64,000 nt of DNA from Caecitellus pseudoparvulus (GCA_965644315.1 CBFFRQ010000029.1:62001-126000), one strand, 5' to 3'. Counted from the first letter of the stretch, positions 1 to 60,476 are shown. Notes: generated by a model from the sequence alone, not told the origin. Numbers and translations are program-made.

Positions 1-3000
1 CGCAAGGCAAAGACGAGGCTCGTGGCATGCGTGCCGTTGAGCAGACCACCCGAGCCAAGGCTGGCCCCATCTATGTTCATGGAGCTTCTGACAAACGACA
101 TGGGGCTGCCCAGGGCTGCCCCCAGGGCATCGTGGAACTGCACTTGCTTCACCTGGATGTCGTCACTGGAGAACGCCGCGGCGCCGGGAGAGGGGTACCT
201 GCCAGGCAGGAACTTGGGCCGCCCAGAGAGGAAGGGGTCGTTCTCCACTGCGGGACTCTCGTGCAAGGGCAGGAAGGACGGGTTGGCAAATACCTCAGGC
301 ACGACAGCCACAGCCACTGCCGGGTCCACCAGCTCCTCACCAGTGCTGTTGAAACGCAGCTGCGTCTGGATGGCAGCCTGCACAGGCACTGGGAGCGTAG
401 CTGCTGCGCTGTGGGCATCCACAGCTGCGACAGAAGGATTCAGCGGCATCTCGAAATGCAGCCAAGAGTGAAGTGGCATGTGTACATGCTGCACAGCTCC
501 AGGCACGAACGGGGCGATGGCACGGGCGGTGATGTCGAACGATGCGGCCCAATGCGACCTCGCGGACACGACGAGCAGCACGGTGTTAGCGGCTTCCATG
601 CCGTGCCTGAACCAGGTGCGTGCGAGCTGCCCAGCAGCAGCTGCAGTGCTTCCCCCCGCAGGGCGGATGAAATCCAGCTTGTTGTGGGAGGGGAAGCCTT
701 CCGCATGCACTGCGTCTTGCCCCACCCCCTCCGGGCCAGGGGGGCGCAGCTGCACGTCCAGCACCTCGGCATCCGACGTGCCCACGCCAAGCACCTCCAG
801 AGACACAGCGTCGAGAACAGTGACCTCCACAACTGCCCCTGCAGGGTTGTCAGCCTTGCGCCGTCCACCAAGCACGGACTGTGGGAGGTTCTTGCCCAGC
901 TGGCCGGCCACGGGCTGGCTGGACGCTGTGTCTGCCAAGCCCTTTGCCGCAGGCAGGGCACACAGCGTGCGCCACACAGCTTCATCGACTGTGCTGCTGG
1001 AGTGGTTGGCTGACTGTGGAACGTCGAAAGCCGAACGGAATGTTCGCACGAGGTCAGCCATAGCAGGGCTCCAATCTCCGGTCGCATGCACGCGGGCGTC
1101 GCCACCCAGGTACCCGCCCATGGCCGCTTGAAGCATGAGCTGCGCAAGGCGCAGGTCGTCATCGCTCGTAGAATGAGACGCAATGACTGGCCGCCGAGCG
1201 CACACGTCGGGAGTCCGCTGCACAGAGACAGAGAGGCGTCCAGTGCCCGAGGGCAGTCGCACCGCATACACTCTGTGATCGCCCGCGGCAACCGAGCCGC
1301 GTAGTGCCGAGCCAGTCACGGCATAGAGTACTTCTGAACTTGCCACGCGAGCATGGTACGGTCCAGCTGTGGCAGTGCCTGCGCCCCGTCGGGGCTTCAC
1401 ACTGGCTCGGGTGACGGCTGTACGAGAGGCTTCCCCGCAGATGCCGAAGCTGCCAATGTTGGTGGCACCAGGGGGAGCTGCCGCCGCCAACGCAGCTGAA
1501 GCTGCGCAGGGCATGAAGAGGCGCTCCTCCCCCGCTGGCATGTCCATGCTCGCAACGCGCGAGATGCCTGACGAGTCGGTGAAGGAGTACGCCGCCCCTG
1601 CAGGGGTTCTCCAGCGGGCACTTGACACGGCGCCGCTGCTCGCAGGGTGCTGAGTGTCTTGTGATGCCGCAGCAAGGGTGAGGCCAGCGTCAGTCATGGC
1701 CCACGCAAGGTCCACGTCCGCTGCGGCAACGCCAGGCAGGTCGTCAGCAGGCAGGGAAGCAGCGAAATAGCCCACAGCCCGGGAGCCAGCCAGGGACAGG
1801 AGAGCAGCACGCTGTGGCACGTCCCCGCTTGCGGGAGTGAAGGTACCTTCCACCTCTGCCGCGCTGCCCAGGGCAGGAAGCACTGCGACTCCACCCCGGA
1901 CGACGAACTGGCACAGGCTGGTGCCCGACGCTGCCACATTGCTTGCCACGAGGCCAGCAGCGGCAGCCGCGCCTGCTGCACACCTGACAGTAACGAACAT
2001 GGATCCCTCTGCGTTCAGCGCTGCTTGGCGGAGGAGCGCATAGTGAGAGTCGTCCATCACACCGTCCAAGAATGCCGAGGAGGGCGTGTACGAAGCGACT
2101 GGGAAAGGCGCCGCCAAGCCATGTGACACAGCCACATCGTTGCTGCTGGAGCTGGGCTGGGGGTCACTGGCCGACAAGAAGAGGTCAACAGCACCCAACA
2201 CATTTGATCCGCCTGCATCCCGCACGGAATCCACGCTGACGTCCAAGGTTGCGGCAGTCAGGGGGACGGGGATGCGGAACGTCACAGAGTCGCTCTCGGC
2301 CAGGGTGAAGGTTGTGTCACGTCCTGGGGGGAGTTGTCCGGCGCCCCCTGCAGACCCTGCAGCCTTGCCTTGCAGCGGGGCAACATCAGTCTTGTAGGTG
2401 AGAATCTCTGAGCCAGAGGCTGATGAAGTGGGTGTGAATGGGATCTGCCAGTCGATGGACAGGGAGCCATCAGCCTGCTGAGTGCAGGTGCTGGGCGCGG
2501 ACACAGCAGCACAATGGATGGGCAGCGGCGGCACTGCAATGAGGCCGAGAACAGCCCCCGAGGCAGACTGCACCTCTAAGAGCACGTCGGGTGCCTCACG
2601 CGGGACACCGCCGATAAAAGGGCTGCTTGCGCCGACGTCGACGCTGGCAGCGAAAGAAAACTGCCCTGCTGCAGGCTGAGGGGACCCAGCTGCCTCGAGC
2701 AACGACACCTCGCCTGAGGCCCCAGCTGCCGCTGCAGCACCGTCACCCCACAGCGGTGCAGCCCATGCAGGCCGCTGCGTCGTGTGGGTCAGTACACGCA
2801 CGCTGGGGGTTCCGTGATCCGCATGCAGGCCCTGCACCGCACGAGGAGCAACGGTCAGGCCAACCGTTTCGGGCGCCAGCTGACCCGGCCGAGCACTGCC
2901 TGCCGCAAGAACGCCAGGCAGCTCCCTGCACCGGTCAGCCAGGGTGTTGTGGCGCTCCAGGTGATACATGAGCGTGTAGCCAGGCAGCCTGTCGTTCACC

Positions 3001-4841
3001 AAGCGAGGCAGCTCAGAGTCAATGTTGGCGTGTGCTCCTGAGGGTGACGACACAGCATACCTAAATGCGCTGCCTTCGGGGGACATGTCCTGGGGTGCTA
3101 CGCGTTGGCCAGCAACTTGGAAGTCGTTGAACTGCAGGGAAGCCAGGTCAGCAAGGTCCTCCGGCCACAGTGCTTCGTCCCGCACCCAAGTCACGCCAGC
3201 CAGGGAGAAGCGAGACCGCTCCCGCACCTGCAGTGGCGCAAGCCCTGCGGAGACCGCGCCGTTGTGGTCCGGGGCTGAGCATGCGCCCGTCGGGTCAGGG
3301 GAGGTGGAGGTCGTGGTGAGAGTGGGCACAACCCAGCTTGCCATGGGCAAGACTTCCCCCATCACCACACGCATGCCCATGGCAAGCTGTGCTGTGACCT
3401 CTGCGTCCCCTCCAGACGTGACGCCGGAGAAGTCAGCAGGGCTCGTTACCCAATCGCCAGTGCGGCGGGCTGACCGCACATGGGCCAGGCGCTCAGCAGC
3501 AGGGCGGGAAGCGTCGTATGTGAAGCCTTGTGTGACGACGTAGCTGCTGCGCACTGAAGGGGTGAGGAGGGACCCCCCTACAACAGCTGCAGCCTGCACT
3601 GCCAGCATGACGTTGGCATCTACGCTGAAGCGCACGGGAATTCCGCCCACGTGCAAGATGCGGTCAAACACCGGCTGCCAATCCTGTCCGGTCGCAACAG
3701 GGAGAATGGTCTGGGTGCGGGACACTCGGTATGGGGAGGCCCAGTCGGACAGGCGCCACTGCATGCCAAAGCCGAACTCGGTGGTGGCACGGAAGTCTGC
3801 CCGGTGCACCTCTCCCCATGCGGTGACTACCTCGTAGTTCACGGTGCGCTTCATGTACCCATGGCAACCGACACAGTCCACACCCCCCGCCACTGCAGTG
3901 GGCAGGCTGCACGGCTGCACTCGCTCCAGGGCAGGGGAGCAAGTCCGGTCACGCCAGACTTGGGATGCGCCAGCGCCAGACAGGGGTGTGCCTGCTTGCG
4001 GCGCGAGGTTCACGTCAGCGCCTGGGGTGGGTGCCTGGGCTCCAAAGTCGTAGTTGAAGCCCATCTGGGACATCGTCATCTCGCCGTCCAGGCCCCAAGC
4101 CAGAGATCGACCACGGTTGTGGCTGTGGGGGTGCTCCAGTGGCACTTCGCTGGCAGCGTACGACAGCGTGATGCGGGCTGCGAAGGTGGAGGACACAGGG
4201 GGCATTCGTGACAACGGCCAGCAGGATCAGAGGTGGAGGCAGGTCAGAGGGGGGGCTTCTCAAGTGGAAGGGGGCGCAATGCAGGGGCGTTTGCAGGTTG
4301 CGTGCGAGCTGCACTGCAGCAGGCACGACGCCAACGCCCCTGCCTTTCCACGTGGCCACGGGCCAAGTCACTCACAGTGTTCAAACAGGTGTGAGGCATT
4401 GACAACATCGAACGTGACGTCGAATGCCTTGACGCCTCCGTCTGCTGCTGAGTCGGGTGCGAGGGTTGGCGTTGCCTTCCGCACTCGAAGGTACCACGGC
4501 GCCGTCTGCAACGCCGAGCAGCCAGTGACGGGGGAAGCCGATGCGAGGAATGATTCTGTTTCACTGTCTGTCAGGAGAGTCTGCACTCTGGCTGGCGCCT
4601 CGGCGCTGATTTCCAGCTGCAGAGAATCCGCTTCACACGAAGCTTGCACTCCTTGCACTCCACCCAGGACGAGGACACCCGCCCGGGGCAGCGCCTCGTA
4701 GTCAACTTGCAGCTCACCACCATGCCGGTCCAAGTGGGACAGCTTCCTGGACAGCGTGCCCTGCGCAGAAACTGTCTGCAGGAGGGCGAGGGAAGCAACT
4801 GCGGCGATGCACCACCGACGGCACGGTCGGAAGGAAGCCAT
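1..4841 (-). CDS. Large secreted protein (>1,500 aa, 3' end outside the window): signal peptide, beta-rich region with CxxC, PPC-like modules, inserted peptidoglycan-binding-like domain
   Basis: ATG at 4841 begins MASFRPCRRWCIAAVASLALLQTVSAQ (signal peptide). Exon 1 4841-4376, GT-AG intron 4375-4178, then an exon 2 that I read as open, with the same reading phase at 4175 and at the left edge. It is absent from the ORF track, probably because it has no stop in the window. The run of + strand frame-1 ORFs (22, 478, 1369, 1837, 2086, 2482, 3022, 3562...) are its antisense shadows. Confidence 0.85.
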
Positions 4842-13370: not shown

Positions 13371-16300
13371 ATGAAGGGCGTCGCAAGCTTTCTTTTCCTC
13401 GTGCTATGTGGGGCGCTGCTGGGCGCAGAAGCGTCTCACTACCGGTACGTAGCCGGCGCAGAGCACGTGCTGAGGCGCAGCCCCAACGCTGCTGGACACG
13501 CTGCTGCTGACAGCGTCGAGCTCTGCACACCCCCGCCCCACCTCACCCGCCGCCAGCTACGGAAACGTCAACTGGGAGCCTAACAACCCGAACAATCTTG
13601 CCGAGCGCTCCGTGAAGTTCTTCGTCAAGCAGGCCTGGTACGTTGTTGGTTCAGCTGCAACTTCCGCACGGGCCGCTGCCGACCAACGCGCGCACACCCC
13701 GTGTCCTTGCCTCCCCGCAGGCGTCTGAGTTTTTTCACCAGGAGCTGCCGCTGTAGGAACTCAGGTGGCAGCTGTGACAACTCCTGCCCCATCGGCGGCA
13801 CCCTGTGCGTTCTGCGCAAGAGGCACTGCAGCTGCTGCCAACTTTTTCACCCTCATACGTTGTACCCCTTCTCACCGCAGGTCGAGTGTTGGGTCCATGT
13901 CCTGGGGAGATGGGTCATCCAGCAGCATCAGTAACTTGGGCATCACCAACCGCTGCGTCGGCGGCGGAGGCGCGTGCGATTGGTTCACGCTGTCAAGGAC
14001 CCTCACCCACACATACAGCGCGCAGAACCGTGGCGGCGGCGCGCCGTGGCAAGTGACTTGGGGCAGTTGCTGCCGCATTGGAGGCATGCAGAACAATGCC
14101 CATGGCTCGTACCGTTTCTTCTCGGACATCAACCTCTCGCCTGTGGGGTCCTGGGTCAACACGTCGCCTGTCGCGTCGCAAGTGCCGATCCAGGAAATCC
14201 AGACTGGCCGGAACAATGTGTGGAGTCTGGGCGCCTCGGACAACGACGTGGACCCCCTCAGCTTCAGCATTGGCTCTGGCGCGGACATGGGTTCGGGCTG
14301 CTCCGGCGCGCCAGGTGGCTTCGCCGTGAACTCCCAGACCGGTGCAGTCTCCTTCAACCCGCCCACTTCCAGCGAGAACGTGTTGTACTCCGCTATGGTC
14401 ATCGTGGGCGATGGTTACTCTCGCATTACCGTGGACTTCATCATGATCACCATCAAGCCCAAGAACATCTGCAAGAGCTGCTCTCCAGGCACCCCCACCC
14501 GGTGCAACATCTGCACGTCCAACGGCCAGTGCTCCGGCGGCTGCCAGTGCCAGATCAACGCCGACCCGACCTTCTACAACGTCCCCGGCTCCCCCTTCCT
14601 GGCACCCACCTTGGGAACCACTGTGTGCTGCCTGGTGGGCCAGGCGTGCAGCTTCCTCATTGGCGTGGAGGACACGGTGGACACCACTTGTGACACCGTC
14701 AGCGTCGTGTCGGGAGACGTGCCCATCGGCGCCACCCCGCCTGTGCTCCACAGGAACGTCGCTGGCACGTGGAGGCGCGAGTACTCCTTCACGTGGACCC
14801 CCTCCGCTGCACAAGCGCGCACGCACCGTGTGTCGTTCGTTGCGCACGACCTCTTCAACGGCCGTGGCGGCCCGCAGTCCATCGAGCTCTTCGTGCCAAC
14901 TGTCTCGCAGTCAGTGCAGCCGACCATCTCAGGCTACAGCCCGCAGACTGCCGATGAGAACACGGCATCCATCTTGACGGTGGACGGCTCAAACTTCAAC
15001 CGAGGCCTGGGCTTGTACTGCCGCTTCCAGCTGGGCGGCAACCCCTTCTTCCTTGTGCGTGCGGTGTACGTGTCCACCTCACGCATCCTGTGCTCCATGC
15101 CCAACAAGGCTTCCCTGGGTGGTGGCTCCAACAACAATGTCAAGGTGTGGGTGTCCAACATTGCCTCGTGCAACCAGTGGACGCCCGTGACGCCCGACTT
15201 CGCCTTTTTCCCGGCTTGCCCTCCTGGCACGGCAGGCCCCACCTGCAGCCAGTGCCCTGCTGGCAAGTACCAGACAGTGGGAGGTGTGGGGACAGGCACA
15301 CAGTGTGTGAACTGCCCAGCAGGCCGATACGGCAACGCGCCAGGGCTAACCATCCCCACCTGCACGGGGCCCTGCATCGCTGGGCATTACTGCCCACCAG
15401 GCAGCACTGCCCCCACTGCCAACGACTGCCCTGCTGGGTACTACGGTGATCGCCCTGAATTGCAGGATGCTGGTTGCTCTGGGCTGTGCCAGGCAGGGTA
15501 TTTCTGCGGCGCTGGCTCTGTCAGTGCCCGGCAAGGTACCTGCCCCCCCGGCCGGTATGGTGGGCCAGGGGAGGTGAACTCAGTCTGTGCCGGGCCCTGC
15601 AACGCTGGGTACTTTTGCACGGGAGCCTCCACCACTGCCACGCAGAACGAGTGCGGAGGCGCAGATGTCTACTGCCAAGAGGGCTCTGGCAGCCCCCTCA
15701 CTGCGCCGGCTGGCACATACACGACGGGCGGCGCCGGGCCCACGACGCGCACCGGCATTCAGACCTGCGAGCCAGGCTACTACTGCGACGGTGGCGTGCG
15801 CAGCGACTGCCCTCCTGGGCGCTACCAGGCAGACCCTGCCGGGTCCAGTGCTGGGTGCCAGGGTCCCTGCCGCTGTGGTTTCAAGTGCCCTGCGCGGTCC
15901 ACGTCGGACTCTGCTGTCCCTTGTGGCGCAGGGTTGGCCTTGCCCGCAACTGTGTACTGTCCGCCGGGGACCAGCATTCCTCAGACCTTTGACACGGACG
16001 ACTTCTACTCCACCCCTGAAGACGCCCCCCCCGATCAGCGGTGTGGCTTCGCTGCTTGCACTGGGGACGAGTTCTGCGTCGACGGCTACCGGCGTCCACG
16101 AGTCGAGTGGACCGAGACCTGCAGCGGCTCTGCGCTCGTTGTGCAGAACAACTACACCGTGTCTGAGAACTCCAATGTGAACTCCTTTGATGTGAGCCTG
16201 AGGTCCAACGAGAACAGTGGGACTGTCTCCATCACCGACGTGACTTTCACGGCACCTCCAGGCTGCCCCAATGCCTCTGCTTGGAGCTACAGCGCTTCTC

Positions 16301-19300
16301 AGAGCGGCAACTCCGCCACTGCCACCCTCTCAGCGACTGGCTACTCCCCCAACCATGAGGTGTGTGATCACTTCAACGCCGTTATCGATGCAAGAACTGG
16401 CCTTGGCGTGGACTTCACCTGCGAGTTGGAGATCTTGGTGGAAGACTTGAATGACTGCCCGGTGTGGGACACGGGGGCCATGACTGCGGACGACTCCCGG
16501 TACCCTGTGCGATTGCTGGAGAATCCGAAGCTGGGAACTGGCCTTGCCATGCAGCTGGCCGCCGAAGGCATCGTCACCGACGAGGACGAGGGCTCTGAAC
16601 TGGATTTCAGCATTGTCACCGTGACGCCTTCGGACGTCACGCCAGGCGCGCCCTCAGGACTGTTCGCCATCGGTCGCTGCTCTGGCCAGCTGTGGATCAA
16701 CACCACCATTCCCGGCGACGTGGACTGGGAGCTTGGGCAGCGAGAGTGGACGATCCGAGTGCAAGTGAACGACACCGCTCAGGAGAACCCCTGTGCTATC
16801 CAGGAGGACATGCAAGTGCGCGTGGTGAACATCAACGAGGCGCCATACTTCTCTGCAGCCGGTAGCACCTTCACTGTGCCTGAGAATTCGCCGCTGGGCA
16901 CGCTCACCAGCCCCTCAAACCCCTCCGTGGTAGATCCTGATGCGACGTTCAACCCGCCTTCGCCGCCCGACACGCAGCCTGACCCGCTCTGGTACAAGAC
17001 GTCGTTTGACATCGTGGCTCAGTCGGATGCCCTTTTCAGCATTAACGTCACCTCGGGAGACATCTCTGTTGGCGTGACGAGCTTGAACTTTGAGGCACTT
17101 GGCACCCCCAGCGTCACTGCAACCCTGGCTGTGCGAGACAGCGGCAGCCCACCTCTCAACTCCCAGGACGATTTCACCCTGCAGGTGCAGGATATCAATG
17201 ACCCCCCTCGGGTGCCTGCCACCCAGCTCTTTGTGCCAGAACTGTCTGTCCCTGGCACTGTCGTCGGGCAGGTCACGGCTGCAGATGACGAGTACATGTT
17301 CAATGCCAGCTCCACCACCATTTCTTGGACCGTGCAGGTGGAGCAGTTTGGCGTGTGTCCCGCGGGGTCACCCCAGAGCTTCTCCAATCCGTTCATCATC
17401 GTGCCCACGACGAACCCCTCCTTCGACCCTCGGGTTACGGCAGACATCATTGTGAACGGCACCCTCGACTTCGAGAGCCTGGCCCTGTACACGCTGCGCG
17501 TGCAGGCGACGGACAACGGCCACCTCGGCTTCCCACCTGAGTCTGGTGTTGGGTTTGTCACCGTGAACATCACGAACGTGAACGAGCCACCCATGTACGA
17601 TGGCCCAACCACCCTCTACACAGATGAGGAGCGCATCACTCCTGCCCAAATCAGCGCCTGGGGCCTGGCCCTGAATGCTTCTGACCCTGACGTGGGCCCT
17701 GGACTGGGGTGCGCACTGGGGCCCCGCCAGCAAGACCCGCTCTCCTTCTCCTTTGTCTCAGGCTCTGATGACGACATTGGCATCAACCTTGCCACGGGGG
17801 TGGTCAGTGCCGTCGCCCGCTTGAACTACGAGTCCAAGAACGTGTACACCATCGTCACTCGCCTCGCCGACCCCAGCACCTTCATCACATTCACTCTCAC
17901 GGTCAACGTGCTGAACGTAAACGAGCCTCCCACGATGCCGTCTGGTCAGGTGGTGTACATGGACGAAGACGTGGGCCCTGGCGTCTTCGCCTCGGCCACC
18001 GCGGCACTGCTCACCCCAGGCCTGCTCGTCGCCGACGACCCTGACTTTGACGACAACACCACCACCTTGCACTACGCCATGCAGGCAGATGGTGCAGGCT
18101 CGGACAAGATGCACGTCCAGGTTCGCTCCCTGGTCACCAACCCAGGTACAGTGTCAGCTTGGCAGCATGCCACCTTCAACTTCGAGGCGACGCCCACCTT
18201 GGGCATGGACATCACTGTCACGGACCGGCACGGCGCCACTGTGAACGGCTCAGTCACGCTTATGCTGCAGAACATCCCAGAACCACCGTTCTTGAGCGAC
18301 TCCTTCGTTGGCCTCGCAGAGCTGTCGCCCTCAGGGACCTCCGTCCTCTCGTTAACTGTGGAGGACGACGACTTCGGCGACTCAGTCACCTACAACATTT
18401 CTTCTGTGTCCAGCAATGGCAGCATTAGCTGTGCAACACTCTTCCCGCCTGGCACAGACATCGTTGGAGATACTCTCGTCACGGCCGACACAGCCCCCGC
18501 CAAACTGGTTGCTGTCCAGGAGTGCTACGTGACGATCATTGCCAAGGACTCCACCAACCTCACAGATGCGGCTGTCATCACTGTGCGCCTGACTCCCCAG
18601 AACCTCGCGCCGACCATTGACCCCATTCAGTCATTCACTGTCCCCGAGTCGGCCATCGTCGGCACCATCATTGTGGGCAACCTCACGGGGAAAGACGCCA
18701 ACGTGCTCCAGAGCCTCTCCTACGTCCTCGTCTCTGCTGTGGACAAGAACGGGGCCAACGCACTGAGCAAGTTTGCTGTCGCAGGCCCGACGCTGTGTGC
18801 GCCTCCCCCTGGCCAGCAGTGCCCCGGCAAGCTCCAGCTCCTGAGCAAGCTTGACTTCGAGACGATGGACGAGTACACACTGGAAGTGCAGGTTGCGGAC
18901 GACGACGTTCCTTCCGCGAATGCCCGGTCAACCATCACACTGACTGTGCAGGACGTAAACGAAGCCCCCGTGCAGACGAGCGCAGGAACCATCTTCCTCA
19001 TCCCTGAGGACACGACCGACGGTGGCGTCCCCGACCCCGCGCCAACGTATGCCGTGGCAACTGATGACGATGGCAATACTTTGACGTGGAGCAGCACAAG
19101 CCTGCCAAGCATCTTGTCTGGCGTCGTCACCGTGCAAGACGGTGGTCCCAGTGGCGCACATGGTCTGATCACGGTGTCAAACCCTGACCCAGCCGTCATT
19201 TCGGCGGCCCTGAACTTCGAGGCCAACACGCAGCCCCTCGGGTTCAACTTGACTGTCACTGACGATGGTGCGGGATTCTTGTCCAGGCAGGCTTTCTATG

Positions 19301-22300
19301 GCATCCAGCTGGTGGATGTGAACGAGCCTCCCTCCGCGACATGGTCCCCGGCTGCCTTGACCGTAGTGGAGGGGCAAGACCGCATCGGCGACGTCCTGGC
19401 GTCTGTCTTTGGCACCGACCCTGACATCTGGTCCACTAACGGCTGGCGTGTCCTTACGTACTCCATTCAGTCTGGGAACACTGACAACACCTTCGAGGCC
19501 ACCACCAATGCGCAGGCACAAATGGGCGAGATCCGCGTGCAGCACATTGTGGACTACGAGAAGGCCACTTCCTTTTCTCTGGGTGTGCGGGTGACAGACG
19601 GCGGTGGGCTGTTCTACGACTTCACCCTGCCTGTGACGGTTGTGAACGTGAATGATGTGAGCATCTCCAATGTCACGGGGCCTTGGACCACCATGAACAC
19701 GCAGGGTGGTGAGATACTGAACTTGTGGGGCACCAACCTGGGACACTACCACGACATGAGCGCTGCCACCATCACCCTGCGCGCTGACGCGACTATCAGC
19801 CGGGGTGACCAGCAGACCTTCCTGAGGAGGAACGTCTTCCCTTGCACCCAGATCACAACCAACACGCACATCCAGTGCACCACGCAGGCGGGCGTCGGCT
19901 CAGACTTGCGATGGAAGCTGTACGTTGAGCACCCAGACGGCGCCATTGACATTGCGCCTGTGACCGTCAACAATGGCCAGCAGCTGCTGGGCTCATACGG
20001 CGTGCCAGTCATCACAGGCATCTCGGGAGCTCATGTTGGCATGAACACCGAAGGTGGCAACAGCGTCTCGTTCACAGGCATCAACTTCCCACCTGCCAGC
20101 CTCAGCAACACCTCTGGTTTCGCTTACTGGCGGGTGACTTACGGACAGGCAGGGGCATCATACACCGCTTCGAATGACGCGTCCACTCCGACGTCAGCAT
20201 CTGTGACCTCTGGGCCCGGTGTCGGCTCGGGGCTCGGATGGGTTATCAACGTCGGAGGCCTGCAGTCTGTGCCATTCTTTGCGCCTGGCACTGCCAGCAG
20301 CTATGCTGCGCCGACCATCACCTCGGTTCGCTTGGCAGTGCAGGGGGTGGACATTTCGGGCCTGCCTGGGGCCGTTGACCGCACCATTATGAACGGGGCT
20401 GGCATGGAGACTGTGGTCATCAAGGGCACGAACCTTGGCACGGAGAGCACGCGTGCCGTGGACGCCGGTTTCAAAGTCGTGTACGCGCGCCTCCTAAACT
20501 CTGTGACCATTAATGGCACCACCAGCGTGCTGCCGTCCCAGTACCGAGGCGGGCGCGGCTCTGGCATCGCCGCTGGGCCCCTCGTCGTGCCAGCGCAGTA
20601 CGCCGTGAACTGGGAACGCCTGTACACGTACACGGCCACTGGCTGCTCAGTCATCATTCCCCACGAGGAGCTGCACTGCACGTCAGCTGTGGGCGCTGGT
20701 GATGGCCTGGTGTGGCGCGTCACAGTGGGTGGCCAGGAGTCTGCCATCGTCGCCGGCTCAAGCGTGTCCCTGCACTACCACCCGCCCATCATCTCGAATT
20801 TGGGCGGCGAGAATGCGTTCAACTCCCCAACCCAGGGGGGTGGCGCCATTGACATCCAGGGCCTGCACCTGGGGGCACCAGGGGATTTGCGTGTGCTTGC
20901 CACATACGGCCGCCAGCATGAAGTAACTCGCTTCCAGGCTGTCGCGTGCACGACAGAGAGTGACAAGTCCATCCGCTGCTACACGGCGCCTGGTACAGGA
21001 AGCCAGTTCTACTGGACCCTTGCTGTGGCGGGGCAAGCATCTCTCTCCAATGACTTCCCCGCCATGACTAGCTACGGACTCCCTGTGGTGTCCGAGTACA
21101 CTGGCCCTGGTGCCAAGGATGCCAACACCACCGGTGGCCAGGTTGTGATCCTGAAGGGGCGCAACTTTGGTCCGATTGGGCCTCATAACATCGACATGGC
21201 CCGCTACTACAATGGCCGGTCCATGGTGAAGTTCAGGGAGGCCGAGGCTGCCGGCTCGACGTCTGACTTCGCCCCCCCTGTCTTTGTGGTCACGAGCGAC
21301 TGCAACGTCACGGTGGCCCACACTCAGGTGCAGTGCACTCTGGCACCTGGTGCTGGTGAGGGCCTCAAGTGGGACCTCGTCATTGACGGCCTGTTGTCCT
21401 CTGAGCTGTCCACAGCCTACCGGCCCCCCAGCATCATCAGTCTGTCGGGGGAGGGTGCGTCACCCGCCAACTCTGCTGGAGGCGAGATTGTGCACCTGGA
21501 CGGTGCTGACTTTGGGCCGCCCCTGTCATACTTGCAGTCTGTGCTCGGTGTCCAGACGCCTTACCTCGAGTGGGTGCGGTACACGCCCTACACAACTCTT
21601 TCCGTAGGGTACTACGAGGCCCAGGACTGTGCTGTTGTGAACCACACCCGCATCACCTGTCGAACCCTCCCTGGGTCAGGCCTGAACATGCACTGGTTCG
21701 CAAGGGTTCGCGGGCAGACCAGCCTGCCCTCGGTTGCTACGTGGAGCTACGACAGCCCCACCATTGACGCCCTTGAGGCAGGGGTGCGCTTCGTTGGGCA
21801 AGGTGCGGCGGCACAGCTCATCGTGCTGCCTCGCGGGCAGTGGGGCACACCTCCCCGCATGTGGACCAACGACGACGGCGAGCTCATCCGCATTGTTGGG
21901 CGTGGCTTTGGCGTGCGAGACCCGCAGACCAACCTGACTGTGGTGGCAGGCGGGCGCGACCTGCCTGTGTTGGAGTCTTGGTATGACGCCCAACGTGAGA
22001 AGGAGGTCATTCTCTTCCGCAAGCCTGCCGGGTGGGGGTCTTCACAAACGCTGCATGTGCGCATTTCCAACTTGGAGCCAGTGCCCCGCATGTCTACGTC
22101 GGTGCCCTTCGACTACAAGCCGCCAGTGCGCACTGCCCAGCCCCGTGACGAGTTTGCAGACTTGTCCACGACGCTGATGAACATCACCATCCTGGGATCG
22201 GGCTTCTGCACCCCCTTGACCGGGCCAGGCCCCACGGTGGGCGCAGGGGACCCCGTGCCACCACCCACGCCCTTCTCCGTGAACGGCCCCCAAGACAACT

Positions 22301-25300
22301 GCGGGCAGATCTTCTTGAAAGATGTCAACTACGATGTCCCGAACCCCAACCAGATCGACCAGTTGTATCCCAACTGGGTGACCATGCAGGGCGCTTCCAG
22401 GGTCTTCCCTGTTCCTCGCGAGCGCTTCTTCTCCTGGAATGACACCTACATCAAGTTTTGGCTGTACTCAGCTGAGGGCAGCGCTGACATCCAGGTTGGT
22501 AACCAAGCATTCTCCATCGGTTTCAGTGACATCCAGATCGCAGCCCGCGACGGTGTCTGTGAAGCGACCACCCAGCGCTACCGTCTCCAGACTGCTGGCA
22601 CAGACATCCTGCGGTTCCCCGTGGACAACGTGTGCAACCGCAACGACGTGGAAGTGGAGTTCTCCCGGGTGGGTGGCTCAAGCACACAGCCTTGCGTGCT
22701 CGTGAGCAACGTGACTCAGTCAGTGGGGCAAGCCGATGGCGACGGTCCATTCGGCACCACCAGCTCCACTACGAACGGCCCTGATGCGTGCGTCGTAGAG
22801 TGCAGGGTGCCACCGGGAGACGGCAACGCTGACCGCAACGTTTTCATCGTGAAGACCTCTTCTGCAACGACTGACCCTTGCAAGATTGGGTACGCTGCTC
22901 CAAACGTCACCTCTGCCACGATGGCGCTGGACACCAACGGGCGCCCGGCCGCTTCTCGCGTCGTCTCTGCGCGCATGTCTGATGAGCCTGTGCCTGATGG
23001 GAACATCTTCCTGGACTACGGTGGTGGTGAGTCCGTCACCTTGCCGTCCTTCCGCACGATCCTCACTGTGCCCACCACGGGTGGCCCGCTCGTGCTGCAA
23101 GGGCACAACTTGGGCCTGCAAGGCCCAGCGGCAGACTCCTCCTGCCTGGACTCGTGGGTAGCACTGTGGAGGTACGGCGCTGTCCCCTCTGACGGCGCTG
23201 TCTGTGCAGGGACAGACAGTGTCGCTGAGCGCACGCCCCACTCCCACTTCGCTGCCACCATCCCCATGCCGCCCGGTGTCGGCCGCCGCCAGTACCTCGC
23301 CATTGGTGTCTCGGGACAGGCCATGCGCGATACCTTCGTCGCCGTTCAGTACGAGCGGCCGGTTGTGACTTCTGTCACGCCGTCTTCCGTGCCTTCCCAG
23401 GGAGGGTGGGTCACTGTGGACGGAGCAAACTTCGGCAACCGTGAGCAGGACATCACCGTTTGGGTGGGCGGCGTCGGCGAGCGCCAGTGCAGCAACGTCG
23501 TCTTTACGAGCCTGCACCACACGTTCATGTGTTTCGTGCCCGAGTTGCTGCCTGGCTTTGCCACTGCCTCAGGTGTGTCCCTCATCGTGGAGGTGGCAGA
23601 GCAGCTGAGCTGCCAGGCTGGTGACCCAGCTGCCCGCTGCGCGCCCTCTGTGCAGTACGACGCGCCCGTCATCACCTCGTTGTCAACATGGCAGGTCCCC
23701 ACCAATGGCGGCACTCGTATCGTGGTGGAAGGCTCCAACTTTGGCCGGAACACGTTCTTGCCCCCTTCGAACCCAGGCGCCGACCTGAACACGGCGGGCC
23801 TCACGGACGCGGAGGTGTTGGCTGTTCTCCGCCTGCGGCCTACCCGCCCCTCAGACCTTACGTACCTGGTCCCTGACCCATTCAGCAACTCCCAGCTGGC
23901 GGACAAGGGCGGTCGCATTGTATACCACAACCACACGCGCATCGAGTTCATCACTCCTACAGGCCAGGGTGGTCCTCGCGAGCTCACCATCTTCGTGGGG
24001 CAGAACAGCTACACCGTGCCAGTGGCCACCAATGCCTTGCGCTTTGACCCCCCCGCTTTTAACATCGCTAAGCCTCCCTCTGGCCCCACGAAGGGTTTCA
24101 TCGTGGCCCTGGAAGGCACTTCCCTTGGTTCCAGGGAGTACCGCTCCCCCAACTCCGCCTTGGTCCCCACGTACACCTTGGGGAGCATCGCAACAAGGGC
24201 TGACCTCTTGGACAAGCCAGCTGGGCAGAACGGCATCGAAGTCACTCTGAACATTGACGGCTATGCGGACCCCCAGCCCTGCTTGGACATGCAGCCGTAC
24301 TGGAACACTGATCGCGTGAACCTGCAGTGGGCACGGGCCTATCTGCACTATGAGTTCCTCTTTGACACCATGCCTACCCCGGCCAACCGGCCCCTGTCCC
24401 CCTACACCCACAACACGTACTACTGCTTCGTCCCCACCGGCCTTGGCAGCGATGTGGAGGTCGTCGCAAACGTGGACGGCATCGAGATGGTGCAGCCGTT
24501 CAGCCTGGACTACAACCCGCCGTACATTTCCACAACGCAGGCGAACCCCGCAGACGCCTTCGGGCAGGATGACTTCAAGATTAAGGGCTCTGACTTCGGA
24601 CCCCTGGACCCCGAGGTCAACCCCATTTCGGTTTACATCGGCGAGGACGAGTGCCTGGGAGCAAGCCAAATCCTGGACGGGACCATCCAGTGTGCCATGC
24701 AAGGAGGGACAGTTGGCCCCAAGGGCATCCTGCTCACGGCAGCTTCCTTCGTCAACATCTCCTACCCGGCTTTGGCTGCAGGCTCTCTTGGGAGCCGTGT
24801 CCTGACTGACGTGCTGGAGGGCCGGGTCGCCGCGGTGGGCTCCAGTGGCGATGCTCTGCATGTGCGTGACGTTGTGCGCCGCCTCAGCGACCTGCCAGAC
24901 CCACGTGCTCGCGTGCGCATCCTGCCTGCCGGGGAAGGACGTGTGTCCATTGACATGGTTGCGGTGGACAGAGCTTCGGGCCTGCCCGTCATGACGCCTC
25001 TGGATCAACTGCCAACGCTGCCGTTGAAGACGGCCGGTCGCGCACTGCAGTCCAATGCGAGCGACTCTGGTGACGCCCAGATCCCCCCCTCGTACACACT
25101 CAACGACTACCCTGTCAACCGCCTGGACGGTGTGTTCAAGATCCAGTTCCACTGTCAGATCGGCTCCTACGGGCAGGTCTCAGAGGAATGCTTCCCGTGC
25201 CCTGATGGTGGCGAGTGCCAGCCCATGTGCCTTGCCTCCACTGCGGCAGGCATTTGCGTGGATTTCCAGGAGCCATACTCCCAGCCTGGCTGGTACGGCA

Positions 25301-27768
25301 TGCCAGTTGCCGTGGGCGACCCCGAGTGCGACCGCCAGTCCCGCCCCGCCCCCTACAACGAGACTGTGTGCTTGAACTTCTTGCCTTGTGAGCCGGCCGA
25401 GGCTTGCATCGGCAACAACGAGTGCCGCCCTGAGTATGAAGGCCCGCGCTGTGGTCAGTGCTCGCAGGGGCACTACCGAGTGGCGGGGCTTTGCGTCAAG
25501 TGCCCAGACTTGGCTGGCTTGTTCATTGCGCTGTTTGTTATCATGATCATCTCCATGGCCCTCATCGGGTACATCCTGAACCGCAAGAAGATGCACCTGG
25601 CCTTCATCTCCATCGGTGTGGACTACTTCCAGGTGCTGGCCATGTTCGCAACCGCTCGCGTCGCTTGGCCCCAGTTCCTGCGGGACCTGTACCGCATTCT
25701 GTCCATCTTCCAGATCAACCTGGACATTACTGCGCCTGAGTGTGCCATCCCTGACGTCAAGTACAGCGGAAAGTGGTTCGTCATCGAGTCCTTGCCCCTG
25801 TTCCTGGGCCTGCTGCTCCTGCTCATCCACGGCGCCAAGACTCTGCTGAACATCATCCTGAAGGTGGACCGCAAGCACAGGAACAAGCACACACCGACTC
25901 TCGTGGCAATGGCCACCCTGCTCATGTACTACCTGTACCTGCTGCTCACCCGCACGACCTTTGACGCGTTCAACTGCCAGCCTACAGACCCCAGTGACGG
26001 CAAGTTGTACCTGGAGGTGGAGTTCATCGAGTGCTACCAGCCCACACACAACGAGATCTTCTACCCGGCTCTCTTCTTCACGCTGCCTGTCTACACCATC
26101 GCGTACCCCGTGTGGGTTTACTTCCACTTGAAGAAGAACAAGGACAAGGTCAAGACGGACCAGATCCTGCGCGCAATGGGCATCGGAGACTCTGAGCTGA
26201 CCAACCCCAACTACGCCTTCCGTCAAATGTTCCACAAGCTGTACTACCACTTCAAGCCTGGCAAGTGGTACTGGCTGCTGCTCATCCTGCTCCGCAAGTT
26301 CCTCATCGCCTTGACAGGCCTGATGTTCCGCCGCACGCCGTCGTTCCAGATGGCCCTGGCATTCCTCGTTCTCTTCTTCTCCTTCTCCCTGCAAGTGCGC
26401 CACAACCCGTACATGTCCATGGCCGAACGCCGTGGCATCATCCTGCACCACCAGTCCAAGGTGAAGGAGGGCAACAAGAAGCACCAGGCCATCAAGGCTG
26501 CCTACGAGACTGCGGTGCGGCATTCCAACGCCCGCCAGCGCCGCCGCCAGGTCAACATGGACGCCGTGTCCTCCTCCAAGGGCCCCTCCTCCCAAGATTA
26601 CCTATTCGACTACAACACCATGGAGGCGGTGCTGCTCTCTTGCGGCTGCTTTGTGTGCTTGTCCGGTATCATGTTCCAGACTGGCGACCCGAACTCTGAC
26701 ATCTACCTCGCCCAGCGTGACGCCCTGACCGTCCTCGTTGGGATCGTCATCTTTGTGTCCATGGTGTACTTCTTCACAGTCTTTGGCTTTGAAGTGTACA
26801 CAACGTGCGGAGGTGCCAACTGCTCCAACCTGTGGGCATCTGACGGAGAGGGTGGCCGTGGCCGCTCCGGCACCAAGTCTGGCAAGAAGCCAAAGCTCAA
26901 GAAGGGGGGCGCTGGCGCCAGCCGGCGTGACCTGGCCCTTGCTGCGGAGCTGGATGCTCAGATGGCTGAAGGCGGCGCCATGGAGGTGAACCCCCTGGCC
27001 ATGCGCCAGACCATGGAGGCTGACCTCGCTGCGCTGAACGACGTGCTGGGCTCAGAAGGCATGCCCACCCAGCAGCAGTGGAACATGGTGCGTGCCCATG
27101 CCAACACCCTGAACAAGGACGTCACGGACCTTCGTTGGGAGGTGTCCAAGCTGGAGGAGGAGCGTGACGCCGTTGCTGAGAAGCGCCGCGAGACAGTGGG
27201 GCGCAACGGCAAGCGCCGGTCCATCCTCGAGCGTGCCCTGGGCCTGAACAAGCAGAGCCCTGGAGCAACCCCTGATGTGGCGGCTGTTGTCGCAGCCCGC
27301 TCTGGGTCAGGCAGCCTGTCTGCGTCAGATGAGGCAGCGGGCGATGGCATCCAGATGGCACCCTTGTCAGCTGGTGGCGCTGCCGCTGCCAGTGTGGTTC
27401 CTGGCAAGCACAGCAAGCAAAAGCGCCCAAGCCTGGCCACCACAGTGCCCAGCGCCGTGCAAGCGACAGACGGCGACTGGACCCGCTGCCACAATGAGGA
27501 CGGGGAGGTGTGGTATGTGAACAACGAAACCGGCGAGAGCACGTACGACATGCCTCAAGGCTTCGCCGCTCCTGACAGTATGCTGTGGACCCCTGACATG
27601 GCAGCAGTCCAAGCTGCCACTCTAGACCACATCAAGGAAGAAGAAGGAGATGGGGAGGGGGACGACGACGACTCGGACGAGCCTGCCGCCTCCGAGGGCA
27701 AGTCAGCCGCAAACCCCATCCATGACCGAGCTTCTCGCATGCGACGCATGTCCATGTCCACGAAGTGA
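13371..27768 (+). CDS. Giant (~4,700 aa) cadherin-repeat, IPT/TIG, Cys-rich receptor with 9 TM helices and a C-terminal WW domain (nonagonal-cadherin-like)
   Basis: Signal peptide MKGVASFLFLVLCGALLGAEA-SHYR at 13371 and three short 5' introns, then one ~13.9-kb exon. Cys-rich CPxGxYC repeats ~15214-16095. About 10 cadherin repeats with DxNE/DPP, LDFE and DPD motifs ~16150-19655. IPT repeats (GGxxVxxxGxNFG) ~19660-24760. Nine hydrophobic segments ~25510-26790. WW domain 27472-27555. Confidence 0.93.
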
Positions 27769-28224
27769 GGCTCCCGTCTCACCACCTCGCTGACGCGTCA
27801 GCGAGCTCATGCCCGGCCAGGCGTTACTGGCCCGGGACCTATTTCTGTTCTTCTCAAGTGACGTGCGACTGTTGCAGTTGCGCCCCAAGGCTTGCTCCCG
27901 CGCGGAACAGCCCGGGGCCCTTCTCTGCATCGCTAGCAGAAATGCATCGCTTTCCTCTCGCCGCTGGCGGGGCTCACGCGCCTGTCGTCAGACATAAGCC
28001 TGCGCGCTGGGTAGCCTGTGCTCAAGTTCTGCGCAGCCACCCATGACAGCCAGAGCCTCTCCTTCTGGAGGGCAGCGTTGCGCAAAGTGCCGCTCTTTGC
28101 ACTTCCCCAAACATCCACAATTTGTCCCAAGTTGGCTGCCCTGTGCCAGTACACTTCCTCCCTGGCGTGCACAGCCAGCTGAGCCACTTGACAGAAGGAA
28201 TACGAAGCCAATTTCCGCTGCACC

Positions 28225-60400: not shown

Positions 60401-60476
60401 AGGGTACGGCGGCTTGGACGACGGCCTGTACACGTCGTCTGACGTTGGCGCCAGCTCGGGCTACGACAGGTTGTGA
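54495..60476 (+). CDS. Type I membrane protein with ~10-12 tandem PPC-like repeats, a probable FN3-like domain, one TM and a short Tyr-motif tail
   Basis: Signal peptide MRLLSALLAPLAAATLCAAQ and one 5' intron. Repeated GDADLYV, GDPDLYV and GDPDMFI cores. TM AIAGGVIGGLVGLAALVALGMYL. Tail ...YGGL...YDRL-stop. Confidence 0.88.

What the first reader, a model, noticed from the sequence alone, without database searches (positions are those of the whole stretch)
13371..27768. Giant 9-TM cadherin receptor with IPT arrays, Cys-rich repeats and a cytoplasmic WW domain
Seen: signal peptide, SHYRYG N-terminal domain, one IPT, CPxGxYC repeats, ~10 cadherin repeats, roughly a dozen IPT/TIG repeats, a Cys-rich stalk, nine hydrophobic helices, a coiled coil and a WW domain. 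Knowledge: cadherins with nine TM helices ('nonagonal' cadherins) are described from stramenopiles such as oomycetes. Inference: this combination, especially the intracellular WW output, may be an undescribed adhesion or mechanosensing receptor. Strong C-ending codon bias suggests substantial expression.
Basis: partly seen in the sequence, partly recalled or inferred. Interest (0 to 1): 0.8.

Follow-up and report, generated by a model that had tools for sequence, protein, structure and literature searches.

The report
Nine-pass stramenopile cadherin, Sib-like tip
This is a real, transcribed gene for a roughly 4,700-residue surface protein of a marine stramenopile protist; it belongs to the 'nonagonal' (nine-pass) cadherin family named in 2016, so only its adhesive tip, its WW tail and the kinship of its membrane part are modestly new.

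Summary
One gene at 13371-27768 (+) has three short GT..AG introns at its 5' end. A marine metatranscriptome contig confirms them exactly.

**Architecture, N to C**
- signal peptide
- Dictyostelium Sib-type head (Pfam SIBA-E_N and Ig_SIBA-E_2nd, both over cut-off)
- one IPT domain
- nine CxxGxY Cys repeats
- about 10 cadherin-sized modules
- about 13 IPT/TIG modules
- Cys stalk (DUF7630)
- nine hydrophobic helices
- a 57-residue cytosolic helix
- a WW domain of the FBP28/PRP40 type

**Interpretation: only partly right.** It is not an undescribed receptor.
- It meets the features of nonagonal cadherins (Fletcher et al. 2016) that I could test.
- About 20 loci in this 30.6-Mb genome combine the same base with cadherin repeats.
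- The base has thousands of relatives in public data. The named ones found here are Cafeteria, Cantina and Triparma.
- This scan already followed up a paralogue (s1-652613).

**What is modestly new**
- The Sib-like tip, found here in only two genes.
- A conserved WW tail.
- A nine-helix base distantly tied to Pfam TRP (PF06011, the fungal Pkd2/Flc type), with no solved fold.

**Most likely role (inferred):** a contact or force sensor of a phagotroph.

Interest is moderate to low.

The parts
13371..13444 (+). Exon 1: start codon, signal peptide (hydrophobic core, A-E-A before the cut) and the first residues of the mature N-terminus (SHYR).
   Evidence: Sequence read. The joint 13444/13557 is seen in an RNA contig.
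13557..13637 (+). Exon 2: first part of the Sib-type N-terminal domain.
   Evidence: GT..AG joints on both sides. Too short alone for Pfam.
13721..13804 (+). Exon 3: Cys-rich continuation of the N-terminal domain. The donor site is GTGCGT.
   Evidence: joint 13804/13881.
13881..27768 (+). Exon 4: 13.9 kb without interruption, through to the stop codon.
   Evidence: RNA contigs are colinear over 13881-19000.
13903..14133 (+). C-terminal two thirds of the SIBA-E_N domain (profile positions 46-117 of 119).
   Evidence: Pfam PF24907, 40.2 bits against a cut-off of 28.1.
14170..14538 (+). Ig_SIBA-E_2nd domain, with a conserved D-x-D-x-D-P-L-S-F-S motif.
   Evidence: Pfam PF24908, 47.5 bits against a cut-off of 27.8, and 52 bits in the genome scan. 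Conserved in the orthologue and paralogue.
14539..14919 (+). Cys-rich, beta-rich module without a Pfam family. Conserved within the subfamily.
14920..15174 (+). N-terminal IPT/TIG domain.
   Evidence: Pfam PF01833, E 1.7e-6.
15199..15981 (+). Nine CxxGx[YF] Cys repeats (Ephrin_rec_like/GCC2_GCC3 type).
   Evidence: Motif scan. Weak PF07699 hit, E 0.002-0.005.
15979..19656 (+). Ten cadherin-sized modules of 108-159 aa, separated by [DN]-x-N-[DE]-x-P linkers.
   Evidence: PF00028, 101.5 bits overall. Per module the E-values are 1.5e-5, 1.2e-7, 1e-4, 0.058, 1.3e-5 and 2.3e-7; four modules are not recognised singly. Linkers.
19657..24831 (+). IPT/TIG array of about 13 modules, with an unassigned 180-aa stretch at 22462-23001.
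   Evidence: PF01833, 105.5 bits overall. Signatures. Per-module hits.
24832..25131 (+). Linker of about 100 aa, rich in R/A/V/L. Most family members lack it.
   Evidence: No Pfam family. Family alignment A4 goes from the last IPT almost directly into the Cys stalk.
25132..25509 (+). Membrane-proximal Cys-rich stalk including DUF7630, with invariant cysteines.
   Evidence: PF24633, 26.9 bits against a cut-off of 27, just under it. It matches 32 of 36 homologues. Beta-hairpins in the model.
25510..26811 (+). Nine-helix membrane module. Invariant D and Q lie in helix 2 (25621, 25630). In helix 6, K is invariant (26296) and the neighbouring R nearly so (26293). Paired Cys lie in the two outer loops.
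   Evidence: Hydropathy. AlphaFold2 pLDDT 83, pTM 0.83. Alignment A1. PF06011 matches 13 of 36 homologues.
27070..27240 (+). 57-residue cytosolic helix, the candidate coiled coil. It follows a conserved N-P-L-A-M motif.
   Evidence: AlphaFold2 tail model, pLDDT 70-84 over this helix. Conservation in alignment A2.
27475..27555 (+). WW domain of the FBP28/PRP40 type, with the second Trp replaced by Tyr.
   Evidence: Pfam, 22.6-27 bits. PDB sequences at E 2e-7. Conserved in the orthologue and paralogue while the flanks diverge. Three-stranded sheet at pLDDT 72-77.
27941..27946 (+). AATGCA hexamer 175 nt after the stop. It is a candidate poly(A) signal only.
   Evidence: Sequence. The meaning rests on an earlier scan note (s1-652571) and was not tested here.

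Best explanation
**What it is (shown).** This is an expressed nuclear gene of a marine stramenopile. It encodes a nonagonal (nine-pass) cadherin of about 4,708 residues.
- A signal peptide sends the N-terminus outside the cell.
- The ectodomain is a long rod: a Sib-type two-domain head, one IPT domain, nine Cys repeats, about 10 cadherin modules and about 13 IPT/TIG modules.
- A disulfide-rich stalk (DUF7630) leads straight into a conserved nine-helix membrane module.
- The odd helix count and the K/R-rich inner loops put the C-terminal tail in the cytosol.
- The tail carries a long helix and a WW domain.

**How it probably works (inferred).** The rod holds an adhesive tip far from the cell surface, where it binds prey, substrate or another cell. 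Binding or pulling is passed through the rigid stalk to the nine-helix module. That module belongs to the same superfamily as the fungal Pkd2/Flc 'TRP-like' proteins, and fission-yeast Pkd2 is a nine-helix, stretch-activated, calcium-permeable protein. The module would therefore turn contact into an ion or conformational signal. The WW domain would recruit proline-rich cytosolic partners, and the long helix may pair subunits.

**My odds.**
- Real gene with this architecture and family placement: about 0.9.
- Role in contact sensing or adhesion: about 0.6.
- Signalling through ion flux in the nine-helix module: about 0.3.
For: **Gene and splicing**
- an RNA contig carries the three predicted GT..AG joints.

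**Domains**
-.

**Nine helices and topology**
-. Inner loops carry +5, +8 and +13 K/R. Outer loops are acidic and hold conserved Cys pairs.

**Family**
- 72 matches to the base in the own genome.
- together: 21 loci match the base at E <= 6e-34, and 20 of them also carry cadherin repeats.
- 4,252 representative relatives.
- the named relatives are the stramenopiles Cafeteria, Cantina and Triparma, apart from one row labelled Batrachochytrium, three labelled Symbiodinium sp. KB8 and a partial match to Willaertia. Those of Cafeteria, Cantina and Triparma combine cadherin, TIG and this base.
- the family name and the founding paper are confirmed through papers that cite it.

**Link to Pkd2/Flc**
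- PF06011 scores 16 bits on this protein.
- 13 of 36 homologues match PF06011, best E 2.2e-10.
- loci in the own genome over the PF06011 cut-off also match this base.
- the nearest ESM Atlas clusters carry PF06011 and DUF7630.
- Literature: Pkd2 has nine TM helices and a tail with a short coiled coil (bioRxiv 10.1101/2022.08.11.503631). Its calcium permeability is stretch-activated (PMC9727806).

**Signs of function beyond anchoring**
- invariant D and Q in helix 2, invariant K and nearly invariant R in helix 6, and 39% mean column identity across very different ectodomains.

**WW tail**
-.
Against: - No function has been tested for any nonagonal cadherin in the papers I could search.
- This protein itself is below the PF06011 cut-off (16 bits against 28.5).
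- The fungal ML-like lipid-binding domain is absent.
- No solved structure resembles the base. Foldseek found nothing at E <= 0.001, and the best VIA Z was 7.7 on partial helix bundles. So no pore or oligomer can be inferred.
- Even for Pkd2, channel status is called 'putative' by its authors.
- The short loop between helices 6 and 7 carries two Arg on the side predicted to face outward.
- The stramenopile identity of the genome rests on nearest named relatives, not on a marker phylogeny.
- Homology to the founding oomycete members was not tested directly.
Confidence: 0.7

Rival explanations
1. It is a pure adhesin. The nine-helix module is only a sturdy membrane anchor or trafficking cassette shared by many surface proteins, and no signal passes through it.
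For: - The same base sits under very different ectodomains in this genome and elsewhere: LRR, FG-GAP, Ephrin_rec_like, lectin and cadherin (earlier notes s1-661125, s1-677882, s1-685571).
- Tails differ between paralogues. The nearer relatives P0003, P0004 and P0158 lack the WW domain.
Against: - Nine helices with invariant charged and polar residues inside helices, and 39% mean column identity across deep divergence, are more than an anchor needs.
- Relatives in PF06011 include a protein with measured stretch-dependent calcium permeability (PMC9727806).
- Within the subfamily the WW motif is conserved while its flanks drift.
Confidence: 0.2
2. It is an adhesion-GPCR-like receptor of the Flamingo/Celsr type. 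Seven of the nine helices would form a G-protein-coupled core, and a GAIN/GPS module would be cleaved.
For: - GenBank labels a partial protein (CAE7265451.1, filed under Symbiodinium sp. KB8) 'Celsr2, partial'. It sits in the cluster (grouped at 90% identity) of P0002, which is nearly identical to this genome's C32 paralogue in the base.
- Apicomplexan CRMPs share the outline of signal peptide, Cys repeats, nine TM and a cytosolic C-terminus. PANTHER calls them GPCR-like (PMC9670195).
Against: - No 7tm, GPS or GAIN family appears in any Pfam scan.
- Family alignment A4 leaves no room for a GAIN domain of about 320 aa between the last IPT and the Cys stalk.
- GPCR chains in the fold searches score TM 0.1-0.2 and probability <= 0.25. 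None stands out.
Confidence: 0.04
3. It is a trigger of regulated exocytosis on contact. It would work like the alveolate CRMP complex, which senses the host and releases rhoptries or mucocysts. Here it would fire extrusomes or secrete digestive or adhesive material onto prey.
For: - CRMPs have the same outline: signal peptide, EGFR-type Cys repeats, nine TM, N-terminus out and C-terminus in. They are needed for contact-triggered discharge in Toxoplasma and Tetrahymena (PMC9670195).
- An earlier scan note (s1-652613) reports kinship of this base with CRMPs.
- The first 4.2 kb of this window hold part of a giant secreted bacterial-wall-cutting protein, according to note s1-677801.
Against: - I could not obtain a CRMP sequence, so homology was not tested here.
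- No extrusome or exocytosis partner was looked for.
- This is a version of the contact-sensor idea rather than a true alternative to it.
Confidence: 0.15

Closest known systems
Nonagonal cadherins of stramenopiles (Fletcher, van West, Gachon 2016, Gene 593:64-75)
   Same: - Cadherin repeats in the ectodomain.
- Nine TM passes.
- Stramenopile host: the nearest named relatives are Cafeteria, Cantina and Triparma.
   Different: - This member adds a Dictyostelium Sib-type head, Ephrin_rec_like Cys repeats and a WW tail.
- The founding paper is not held in the library, so I could not read what it says about IPT/TIG arrays, tails or the kinship of the membrane part.
- Direct homology to oomycete members was not tested.
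Fungal 'TRP-like' family PF06011 (S. pombe Pkd2, Trp663, Trp1322; S. cerevisiae Flc proteins)
   Same: - Nine TM helices over about 400-430 residues.
- N-terminus outside.
- Mostly disordered cytosolic tail with one helix or short coiled coil.
- HMM similarity at family level.
   Different: - The ectodomain is about 3,900 residues of adhesion modules. The fungal proteins have a 150-residue ML-like lipid-binding domain instead.
- A DUF7630 Cys stalk is present.
- This protein itself is under the Pfam cut-off.
Dictyostelium Sib adhesins (SibA-E)
   Same: The first two N-terminal domains match Pfam SIBA-E_N and Ig_SIBA-E_2nd over their cut-offs. Both proteins are surface proteins of phagotrophs.
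   Different: - No VWA domain.
- No single GxxxG TM helix.
- No NPxY talin-binding tail.
- A preprint found no Sib proteins outside Dictyostelia (10.1101/2020.04.29.069435), so only the head module is shared.
Alveolate CRMPs (cysteine repeat modular proteins; TgCRMPa/b, PfCRMP1-4, Tetrahymena CRMPs)
   Same: - Signal peptide.
- Cys-rich EGFR-type repeats next to the membrane.
- Nine predicted TM helices in the Toxoplasma and Plasmodium CRMPs (five in Tetrahymena's, per PMC9670195).
- Cytosolic C-terminus.
- Proposed contact-sensor role (PMC9670195).
   Different: - CRMP tips are MAR/Kringle modules, not cadherin or IPT.
- Sequence or fold kinship was not tested here.
Metazoan Flamingo/Celsr and classical cadherins
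   Same: Tandem cadherin repeats on a membrane protein, with linker motifs of the calcium-binding type.
   Different: - No 7tm_2 core.
- No GAIN/GPS module.
- No catenin-binding tail.
- Nine helices of another fold.

Membership tests
Nonagonal cadherins (Fletcher et al. 2016) | Extracellular cadherin (EC) repeats | tested here: met
   PF00028 scores 101.5 bits overall. Two modules are above the cut-off singly and six match at E <= 0.06. Nine EC-type linkers.
Nonagonal cadherins (Fletcher et al. 2016) | Nine transmembrane passes | tested here: met
   Nine hydrophobic helices by hydropathy and in the AlphaFold2 model at pLDDT 83. DeepTMHMM was not available.
Nonagonal cadherins (Fletcher et al. 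2016) | Found in stramenopiles | tested here: inconclusive
   The nearest named homologues with the same layout are Cafeteria roenbergensis, Cantina marsupialis and Triparma spp.. The genome's own identity was not established by markers. Other scan notes call it a stramenopile, but that is a lead only.
Nonagonal cadherins (Fletcher et al. 2016) | Sequence homology to the founding (oomycete and other) members | not tested
   No oomycete sequence came up in the word-indexed searches. The paper is not held.
Pfam PF06011 TRP (fungal Pkd2/Flc type) | HMM match over the gathering score | tested here: inconclusive
   This protein scores 16.1 bits against 28.5. Of 36 homologues of the base, 13 match, best E 2.2e-10. 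Loci in the own genome over the cut-off also match this base.
Pfam PF06011 TRP (fungal Pkd2/Flc type) | Nine-helix membrane domain with a cytosolic tail holding a short coiled coil | tested here: met
   The Pkd2 description is in 10.1101/2022.08.11.503631.
Pfam PF06011 TRP (fungal Pkd2/Flc type) | N-terminal ML-like lipid-binding domain | tested here: not met
   No such family appears in any Pfam scan of the ectodomain.
Pfam PF06011 TRP (fungal Pkd2/Flc type) | Stretch-dependent ion permeability | not testable with these tools
   Needs reconstitution or electrophysiology.
Dictyostelium Sib proteins | SIBA-E_N plus second Ig-like domain at the N-terminus | tested here: met
   40.2 and 47.5 bits, both over their cut-offs.
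Dictyostelium Sib proteins | VWA domain, single TM helix and NPxY talin-binding tail | tested here: not met
   No VWA hit. Nine helices rather than one. The tail has N-P-L-A and N-P-I-H but no NPxY.
Adhesion GPCR / Flamingo-Celsr | GAIN/GPS module and a class B seven-helix core | tested here: not met
   No Pfam hit. Alignment A4 leaves no space for GAIN. No GPCR fold match.
WW domain | About 30-residue three-stranded sheet with a first Trp, a central aromatic pair, and a second Trp and Pro | tested here: met
   Solved WW domains match at E 2e-7 to 1e-5. Three strands at pLDDT 72-77. The first Trp, the W-Y pair and the Pro are present. The second Trp is Tyr in all four WW-bearing sequences aligned here: this protein, P0001, P0002 and P0153.
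Alveolate CRMPs | Sequence or fold homology of the membrane region | not tested
   Only the outline was compared, from PMC9670195. No CRMP sequence was available through the tools.

The most novel reading that the evidence does not exclude
The cadherin-IPT rod is a gating tether attached covalently to a Pkd2/Flc-type mechanosensitive, calcium-permeable module. When prey or substrate pulls on the Sib-like tip, the nine-helix module opens. The FBP28/PRP40-type WW tail then couples the event to proline-rich actin regulators. This would be a single-polypeptide counterpart of the hair-cell arrangement, where a cadherin tip link pulls on a separate transduction channel. It would have been invented independently in a phagotrophic protist and diversified into about 20 tips per genome.
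Probability: 0.15. Interest if true: 0.8.

Novelty: new member of a known kind. Interest (0 to 1): 0.35.

Why it matters
Cadherins outside animals are rare, and no nonagonal cadherin has a tested function in the papers I could search.

- **Transcript support.** This gene has a 5' structure confirmed by a transcript, RNA contigs colinear over the first 5.1 kb of its large exon, and a complete domain map.
- **Clues to function.** The tip is a head module otherwise known from Dictyostelium adhesins that bind phagocytic particles. The nine-helix base ties to the fungal Pkd2/Flc group, one member of which responds to membrane stretch.
- **A testable idea.** Together these suggest how small marine grazers might sense contact with prey or surfaces.
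- **A wider point.** One conserved membrane module is reused under many heads, which looks like a general receptor platform of protists whose mechanism is unknown.
- **A practical by-product.** Several GenBank proteins filed under Symbiodinium sp. KB8 appear to come from this organism.

Tried and rejected
1. **Self-trained HMMs.** I tried to count cadherin and IPT repeats by iterating from one repeat of the protein. The repeats are too divergent and only the seed came back. I used linker and start motifs plus per-module Pfam scans instead.
2. **Foldseek against PDB.** Nothing at E <= 0.001. The best TM-scores, 0.1-0.2, were with unrelated helical proteins.
3. **VIA-align against 48,161 PDB representatives.** The best Z was 7.7 on four-helix parts of Cys-loop receptors and designed bundles. 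That is within the noise range stated for helical models. So there is no solved fold, and no classical six-helix TRP or GPCR core.
4. **The founding paper.** It is not held. I relied on three citing papers for its existence and scope.
5. **Exons 1-3 scanned singly in Pfam.** They are too short and gave no hits. All protein coordinates come from exon 4 by reference.
6. **GAIN/GPS or another cleavage module before the membrane.** Rejected.
7. **Misassembly, pseudogene or bacterial contaminant.** Rejected, because of spliced RNA, GT..AG introns, near-identical contigs in several public runs and conserved paralogues.
8. **Animal origin suggested by the 'Celsr2' label.** Rejected, because the label sits on a fragment of a paralogue with this nine-helix base.
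10. **Fold search with the tail model.** Not attempted, because its mean pLDDT is 52.7.

Full report
**1. Gene and transcript**

The window is about 61% G+C. An open frame of 4,667 codons as listed (4,679 from stop to stop) ends at the stop codon at 27766-27768. It is preceded by an ATG at 13371 and three short segments bounded by GT and AG. My reading of the splice sites gives these exons:
- Exon 1: 13371-13444
- Exon 2: 13557-13637
- Exon 3: 13721-13804
- Exon 4: 13881-27768

The total is 14,127 coding bases, or about 4,708 residues.

Four marine metatranscriptome runs hold pieces of the first 5.8 kb at 95-100% identity. One 1,345-nt contig spans 13235-14850. It skips exactly 13445-13556, 13638-13720 and 13805-13880, each with GT..AG ends. 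No other joint is seen between 13881 and 19000.

So the gene is real, transcribed and spliced as predicted. These are contigs, so they say nothing about expression level. All protein coordinates below count from window 13882, inside exon 4.

**2. Domain map**

- **Signal peptide.** Exon 1 encodes a typical one: a short basic start, a hydrophobic core, then A-E-A before the mature S-H-Y-R-Y-G.
- **Sib-type head.** The start of exon 4 matches positions 46-117 of the 119-position Pfam model SIBA-E_N, at 40.2 bits against a cut-off of 28.1. Residues 97-219 match Ig_SIBA-E_2nd at 47.5 bits against 27.8. These two models describe the N-terminus of the Dictyostelium Sib adhesins.
- **Unassigned module.** Residues 220-346 are Cys-rich, have no Pfam family and are conserved within the subfamily.
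- **N-terminal IPT/TIG.** Residues 347-431, E 1.7e-6.
- **Cys repeats.** Nine CxxGx[YF] repeats at residues 458-643, with weak Ephrin_rec_like hits.
- **Cadherin region.** Ten modules of 108-159 residues, separated by nine linkers of the [DN]-x-N-[DE]-x-P type. Pfam Cadherin scores 101.5 bits on the whole protein. Scanned one by one, six modules match at E 1.2e-7 to 0.058, two of them over the cut-off. Four are not recognised.
- **IPT/TIG array.** It runs from residue 1926 to about 3650. There are 13 start signatures, TIG scores 105.5 bits overall, and eight modules match singly. A stretch of 180 residues (2861-3040) has no family.
- **Linker.** About 100 residues rich in R/A/V. Family alignment A4 shows that most relatives lack it.
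- **Stalk.** A Cys-rich stalk with DUF7630.
- **Membrane module.** Nine hydrophobic helices.
- **Tail.** 328 residues.

**3. Membrane module and topology**

I aligned this region with 35 relatives that are 32-82% identical to it. Mean column identity is 39%. Invariant residues include paired cysteines in the stalk and in two loops, an Asp and a Gln in helix 2, a Lys in helix 6 (the Arg beside it is nearly invariant), and several prolines.

AlphaFold2 on this alignment gives mean pLDDT 83 and pTM 0.83, with nine long helices at the hydrophobic segments. With the ectodomain outside:
- The loops predicted to face inward carry 5, 8 and 13 Lys/Arg.
- The two long outer loops are acidic and hold the conserved Cys pairs.
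- The C-terminus is cytosolic.

One small misfit remains. The four-residue loop between helices 6 and 7 has two Arg on the side predicted to face outward. Whether that hairpin crosses fully or re-enters, the parity does not change.

**4. What the base is related to**

On this protein alone, Pfam TRP (PF06011) scores only 16 bits. It does match 13 of the 36 aligned relatives, best E 2.2e-10, and DUF7630 matches 32 of them. In the own genome, 14 loci match PF06011, seven over the cut-off. Several of those loci also match this base. One cadherin-TIG relative carries PF06011 in its precomputed annotation (P0226). The nearest ESM Atlas clusters, both by shape and by language-model features, carry PF06011, DUF7630 and Ephrin_rec_like, and one also carries WW. 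Their recorded taxa include green algae, haptophytes, ciliates and cnidarian samples.

To my knowledge PF06011 was built around fission-yeast Pkd2 and its fungal relatives. The papers I read describe Pkd2 as having a signal peptide, a small outer domain, nine TM helices and a mostly disordered tail with a short coiled coil. They also report stretch-activated calcium permeability (PMC9727806).

No solved structure resembles the base. Foldseek found nothing at E <= 0.001. An exhaustive alignment to 48,161 PDB representatives peaked at Z 7.7 on partial four-helix matches. So the base is neither a classical six-helix TRP core nor a GPCR core, as far as these searches can see.

**5. The tail**

AlphaFold2 on a seven-sequence alignment predicts a mostly disordered tail. 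It contains a 57-residue helix (pLDDT 70-84) and a three-stranded sheet (pLDDT 72-77).
- The sheet region matches solved WW domains of TCERG1/FBP28 and PRP40/FBP11 at E 2e-7 to 1e-5. In Pfam it scores 22.6-27 bits.
- The motif W-T-R...G-x-V-W-Y-x-N...E-S-x-Y-D-M-P is kept in the closest relative (P0001, 53% tail identity) and in the paralogue group (41%), while the flanks diverge. The second signature Trp is Tyr in all of them.
- More distant paralogues lack the domain.
- Other metagenomic family members in another branch of the tree do have Pfam WW, so the WW tail recurs on this base.

The nearest solved WW domains belong to proteins first found as formin binders. That suggests proline-rich ligands such as actin regulators, but this is inference only.

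**6. Family and organism**

The base finds 72 places in the 30.6-Mb genome. Twenty-one match at E <= 6e-34, all in open frames of 3,700-8,700 codons. Twenty of those frames also hold Pfam cadherin matches. Two pairs, C20/C68 and C32/C65, are nearly identical and may be haplotigs.

An exhaustive HMMER search of 1.84 billion representatives gave 4,252 relatives at E <= 0.001 and 552 at E <= 1e-30. Named relatives with cadherin + TIG + this base come from Cafeteria roenbergensis, Cantina marsupialis and Triparma species, all stramenopiles.

The family 'nonagonal cadherins' was named for exactly this combination in stramenopiles by Fletcher, van West and Gachon (2016). I could confirm the paper only through three citing papers, because it is not held.

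In a quick maximum-likelihood tree of the base:
- This gene pairs with metagenomic P0001 (82% identity).
- Next comes the C32/C65 paralogue (74% identity).
- This five-row group has SH-aLRT support of 99.

The Sib-type Ig domain occurs only in these loci of the genome, so there is a small subfamily with a Sib head and a WW tail. A preprint that looked for Sib proteins found none outside Dictyostelia. Only the head module is shared here; the VWA domain and the NPxY tail are not.

**7. Mechanism**

Shown:
- The architecture.
- The topology, by prediction.
- Transcription.
- Conservation of the base, the head and the WW domain.

Inferred:
- The rod presents an adhesive tip.
- The rigid Cys stalk joins it directly to a conserved nine-helix module whose fungal relative responds to membrane stretch.
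- The tail offers a helix for pairing and a WW domain for recruiting partners.

I therefore favour a contact or force sensor of a phagotroph. A plain adhesin is the main rival. A CRMP-like trigger of secretion is a variant of the sensor idea. CRMPs share the outline and a proposed contact-sensor role (PMC9670195), but I could not test homology. An adhesion-GPCR reading is not supported.

**8. Earlier scan notes**

This scan had already met the family on other DNA of the same genome.
- **s1-652613** is a followed-up paralogue with a lectin tip. It reached the same family assignment and suggested links to Pkd2 and CRMP. I re-derived the Pkd2/PF06011 link independently but not the CRMP link.
- **s1-668561** describes a paralogue with a Sib-like head. 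My genome scan places such loci at C32 and C65.

**9. Surroundings**

The neighbours are unrelated: a CFAP97/Hemingway-like gene and a WD40 gene upstream, and a GAPDH gene downstream. The codon-bias observation is correct (C3 = 0.468), but its link to expression level is untested.

**10. Verdict**

This is a well-supported gene and a fine specimen, but it is a new member of a known family. The new details are modest: the Sib-type tip, the conserved FBP28-type WW tail, and the PF06011 kinship of the base with no solved fold.

Noticed in passing
window 23566-27765 and paralogues; GenBank CAE7626518.1, CAE7826972.1, CAE7265451.1: Three partial proteins filed under Symbiodinium sp. KB8 match this family. 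One is 99% identical to this gene over the part compared, and one is labelled 'Celsr2, partial'. The KB8 assembly probably holds contigs of this stramenopile as a culture contaminant.
   Followed up: partly
window 54780-60473 (+): An open frame of 1,898 codons has the same strong C-ending codon bias (C3 0.452) as the cadherin gene and no Pfam family at E <= 0.001.
   Followed up: partly
G000:C29:43936-47847 (+), 14-18 kb before the window's start: An open frame of 1,473 codons holds at least nine Pfam WW matches. A multi-WW protein therefore lies on the same contig as this WW-tailed receptor.
   Followed up: no
window 27941-27946: The hexamer AATGCA lies 175 nt after the stop. It fits the AAUGCA poly(A) signal that another note of this scan (s1-652571) reports for this genome.
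   Followed up: no
G000 C20:28526-30070 and C68:861892-863436; C32:809541-811118 and C65:3786-5378: Two pairs of giant cadherin loci are nearly identical in the base (branch lengths 0-0.014). They may be haplotigs or very recent duplicates, so paralogue counts may be inflated by two.
   Followed up: partly
P0211 (labelled Batrachochytrium salamandrivorans BASA81): A 4,422-residue cadherin-TIG protein with this base groups with Cantina marsupialis in the tree. A chytrid origin seems doubtful, and contamination of that assembly is possible.
   Followed up: no
window 24832-25131: A linker of about 100 residues, rich in R/A/V/L, lies between the last IPT and the Cys stalk. Most relatives lack it. 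No cleavage-site test was possible.
   Followed up: partly
window 22462-23001: A stretch of 180 residues inside the IPT array has no Pfam family and no IPT start signature. It may be an inserted domain of another kind.
   Followed up: no
window 26326-26337: The four-residue loop between helices 6 and 7 (F-R-R-T) puts two Arg on the side predicted to face outward. The Phe is nearly invariant. This hairpin may be re-entrant rather than fully membrane-spanning.
   Followed up: no
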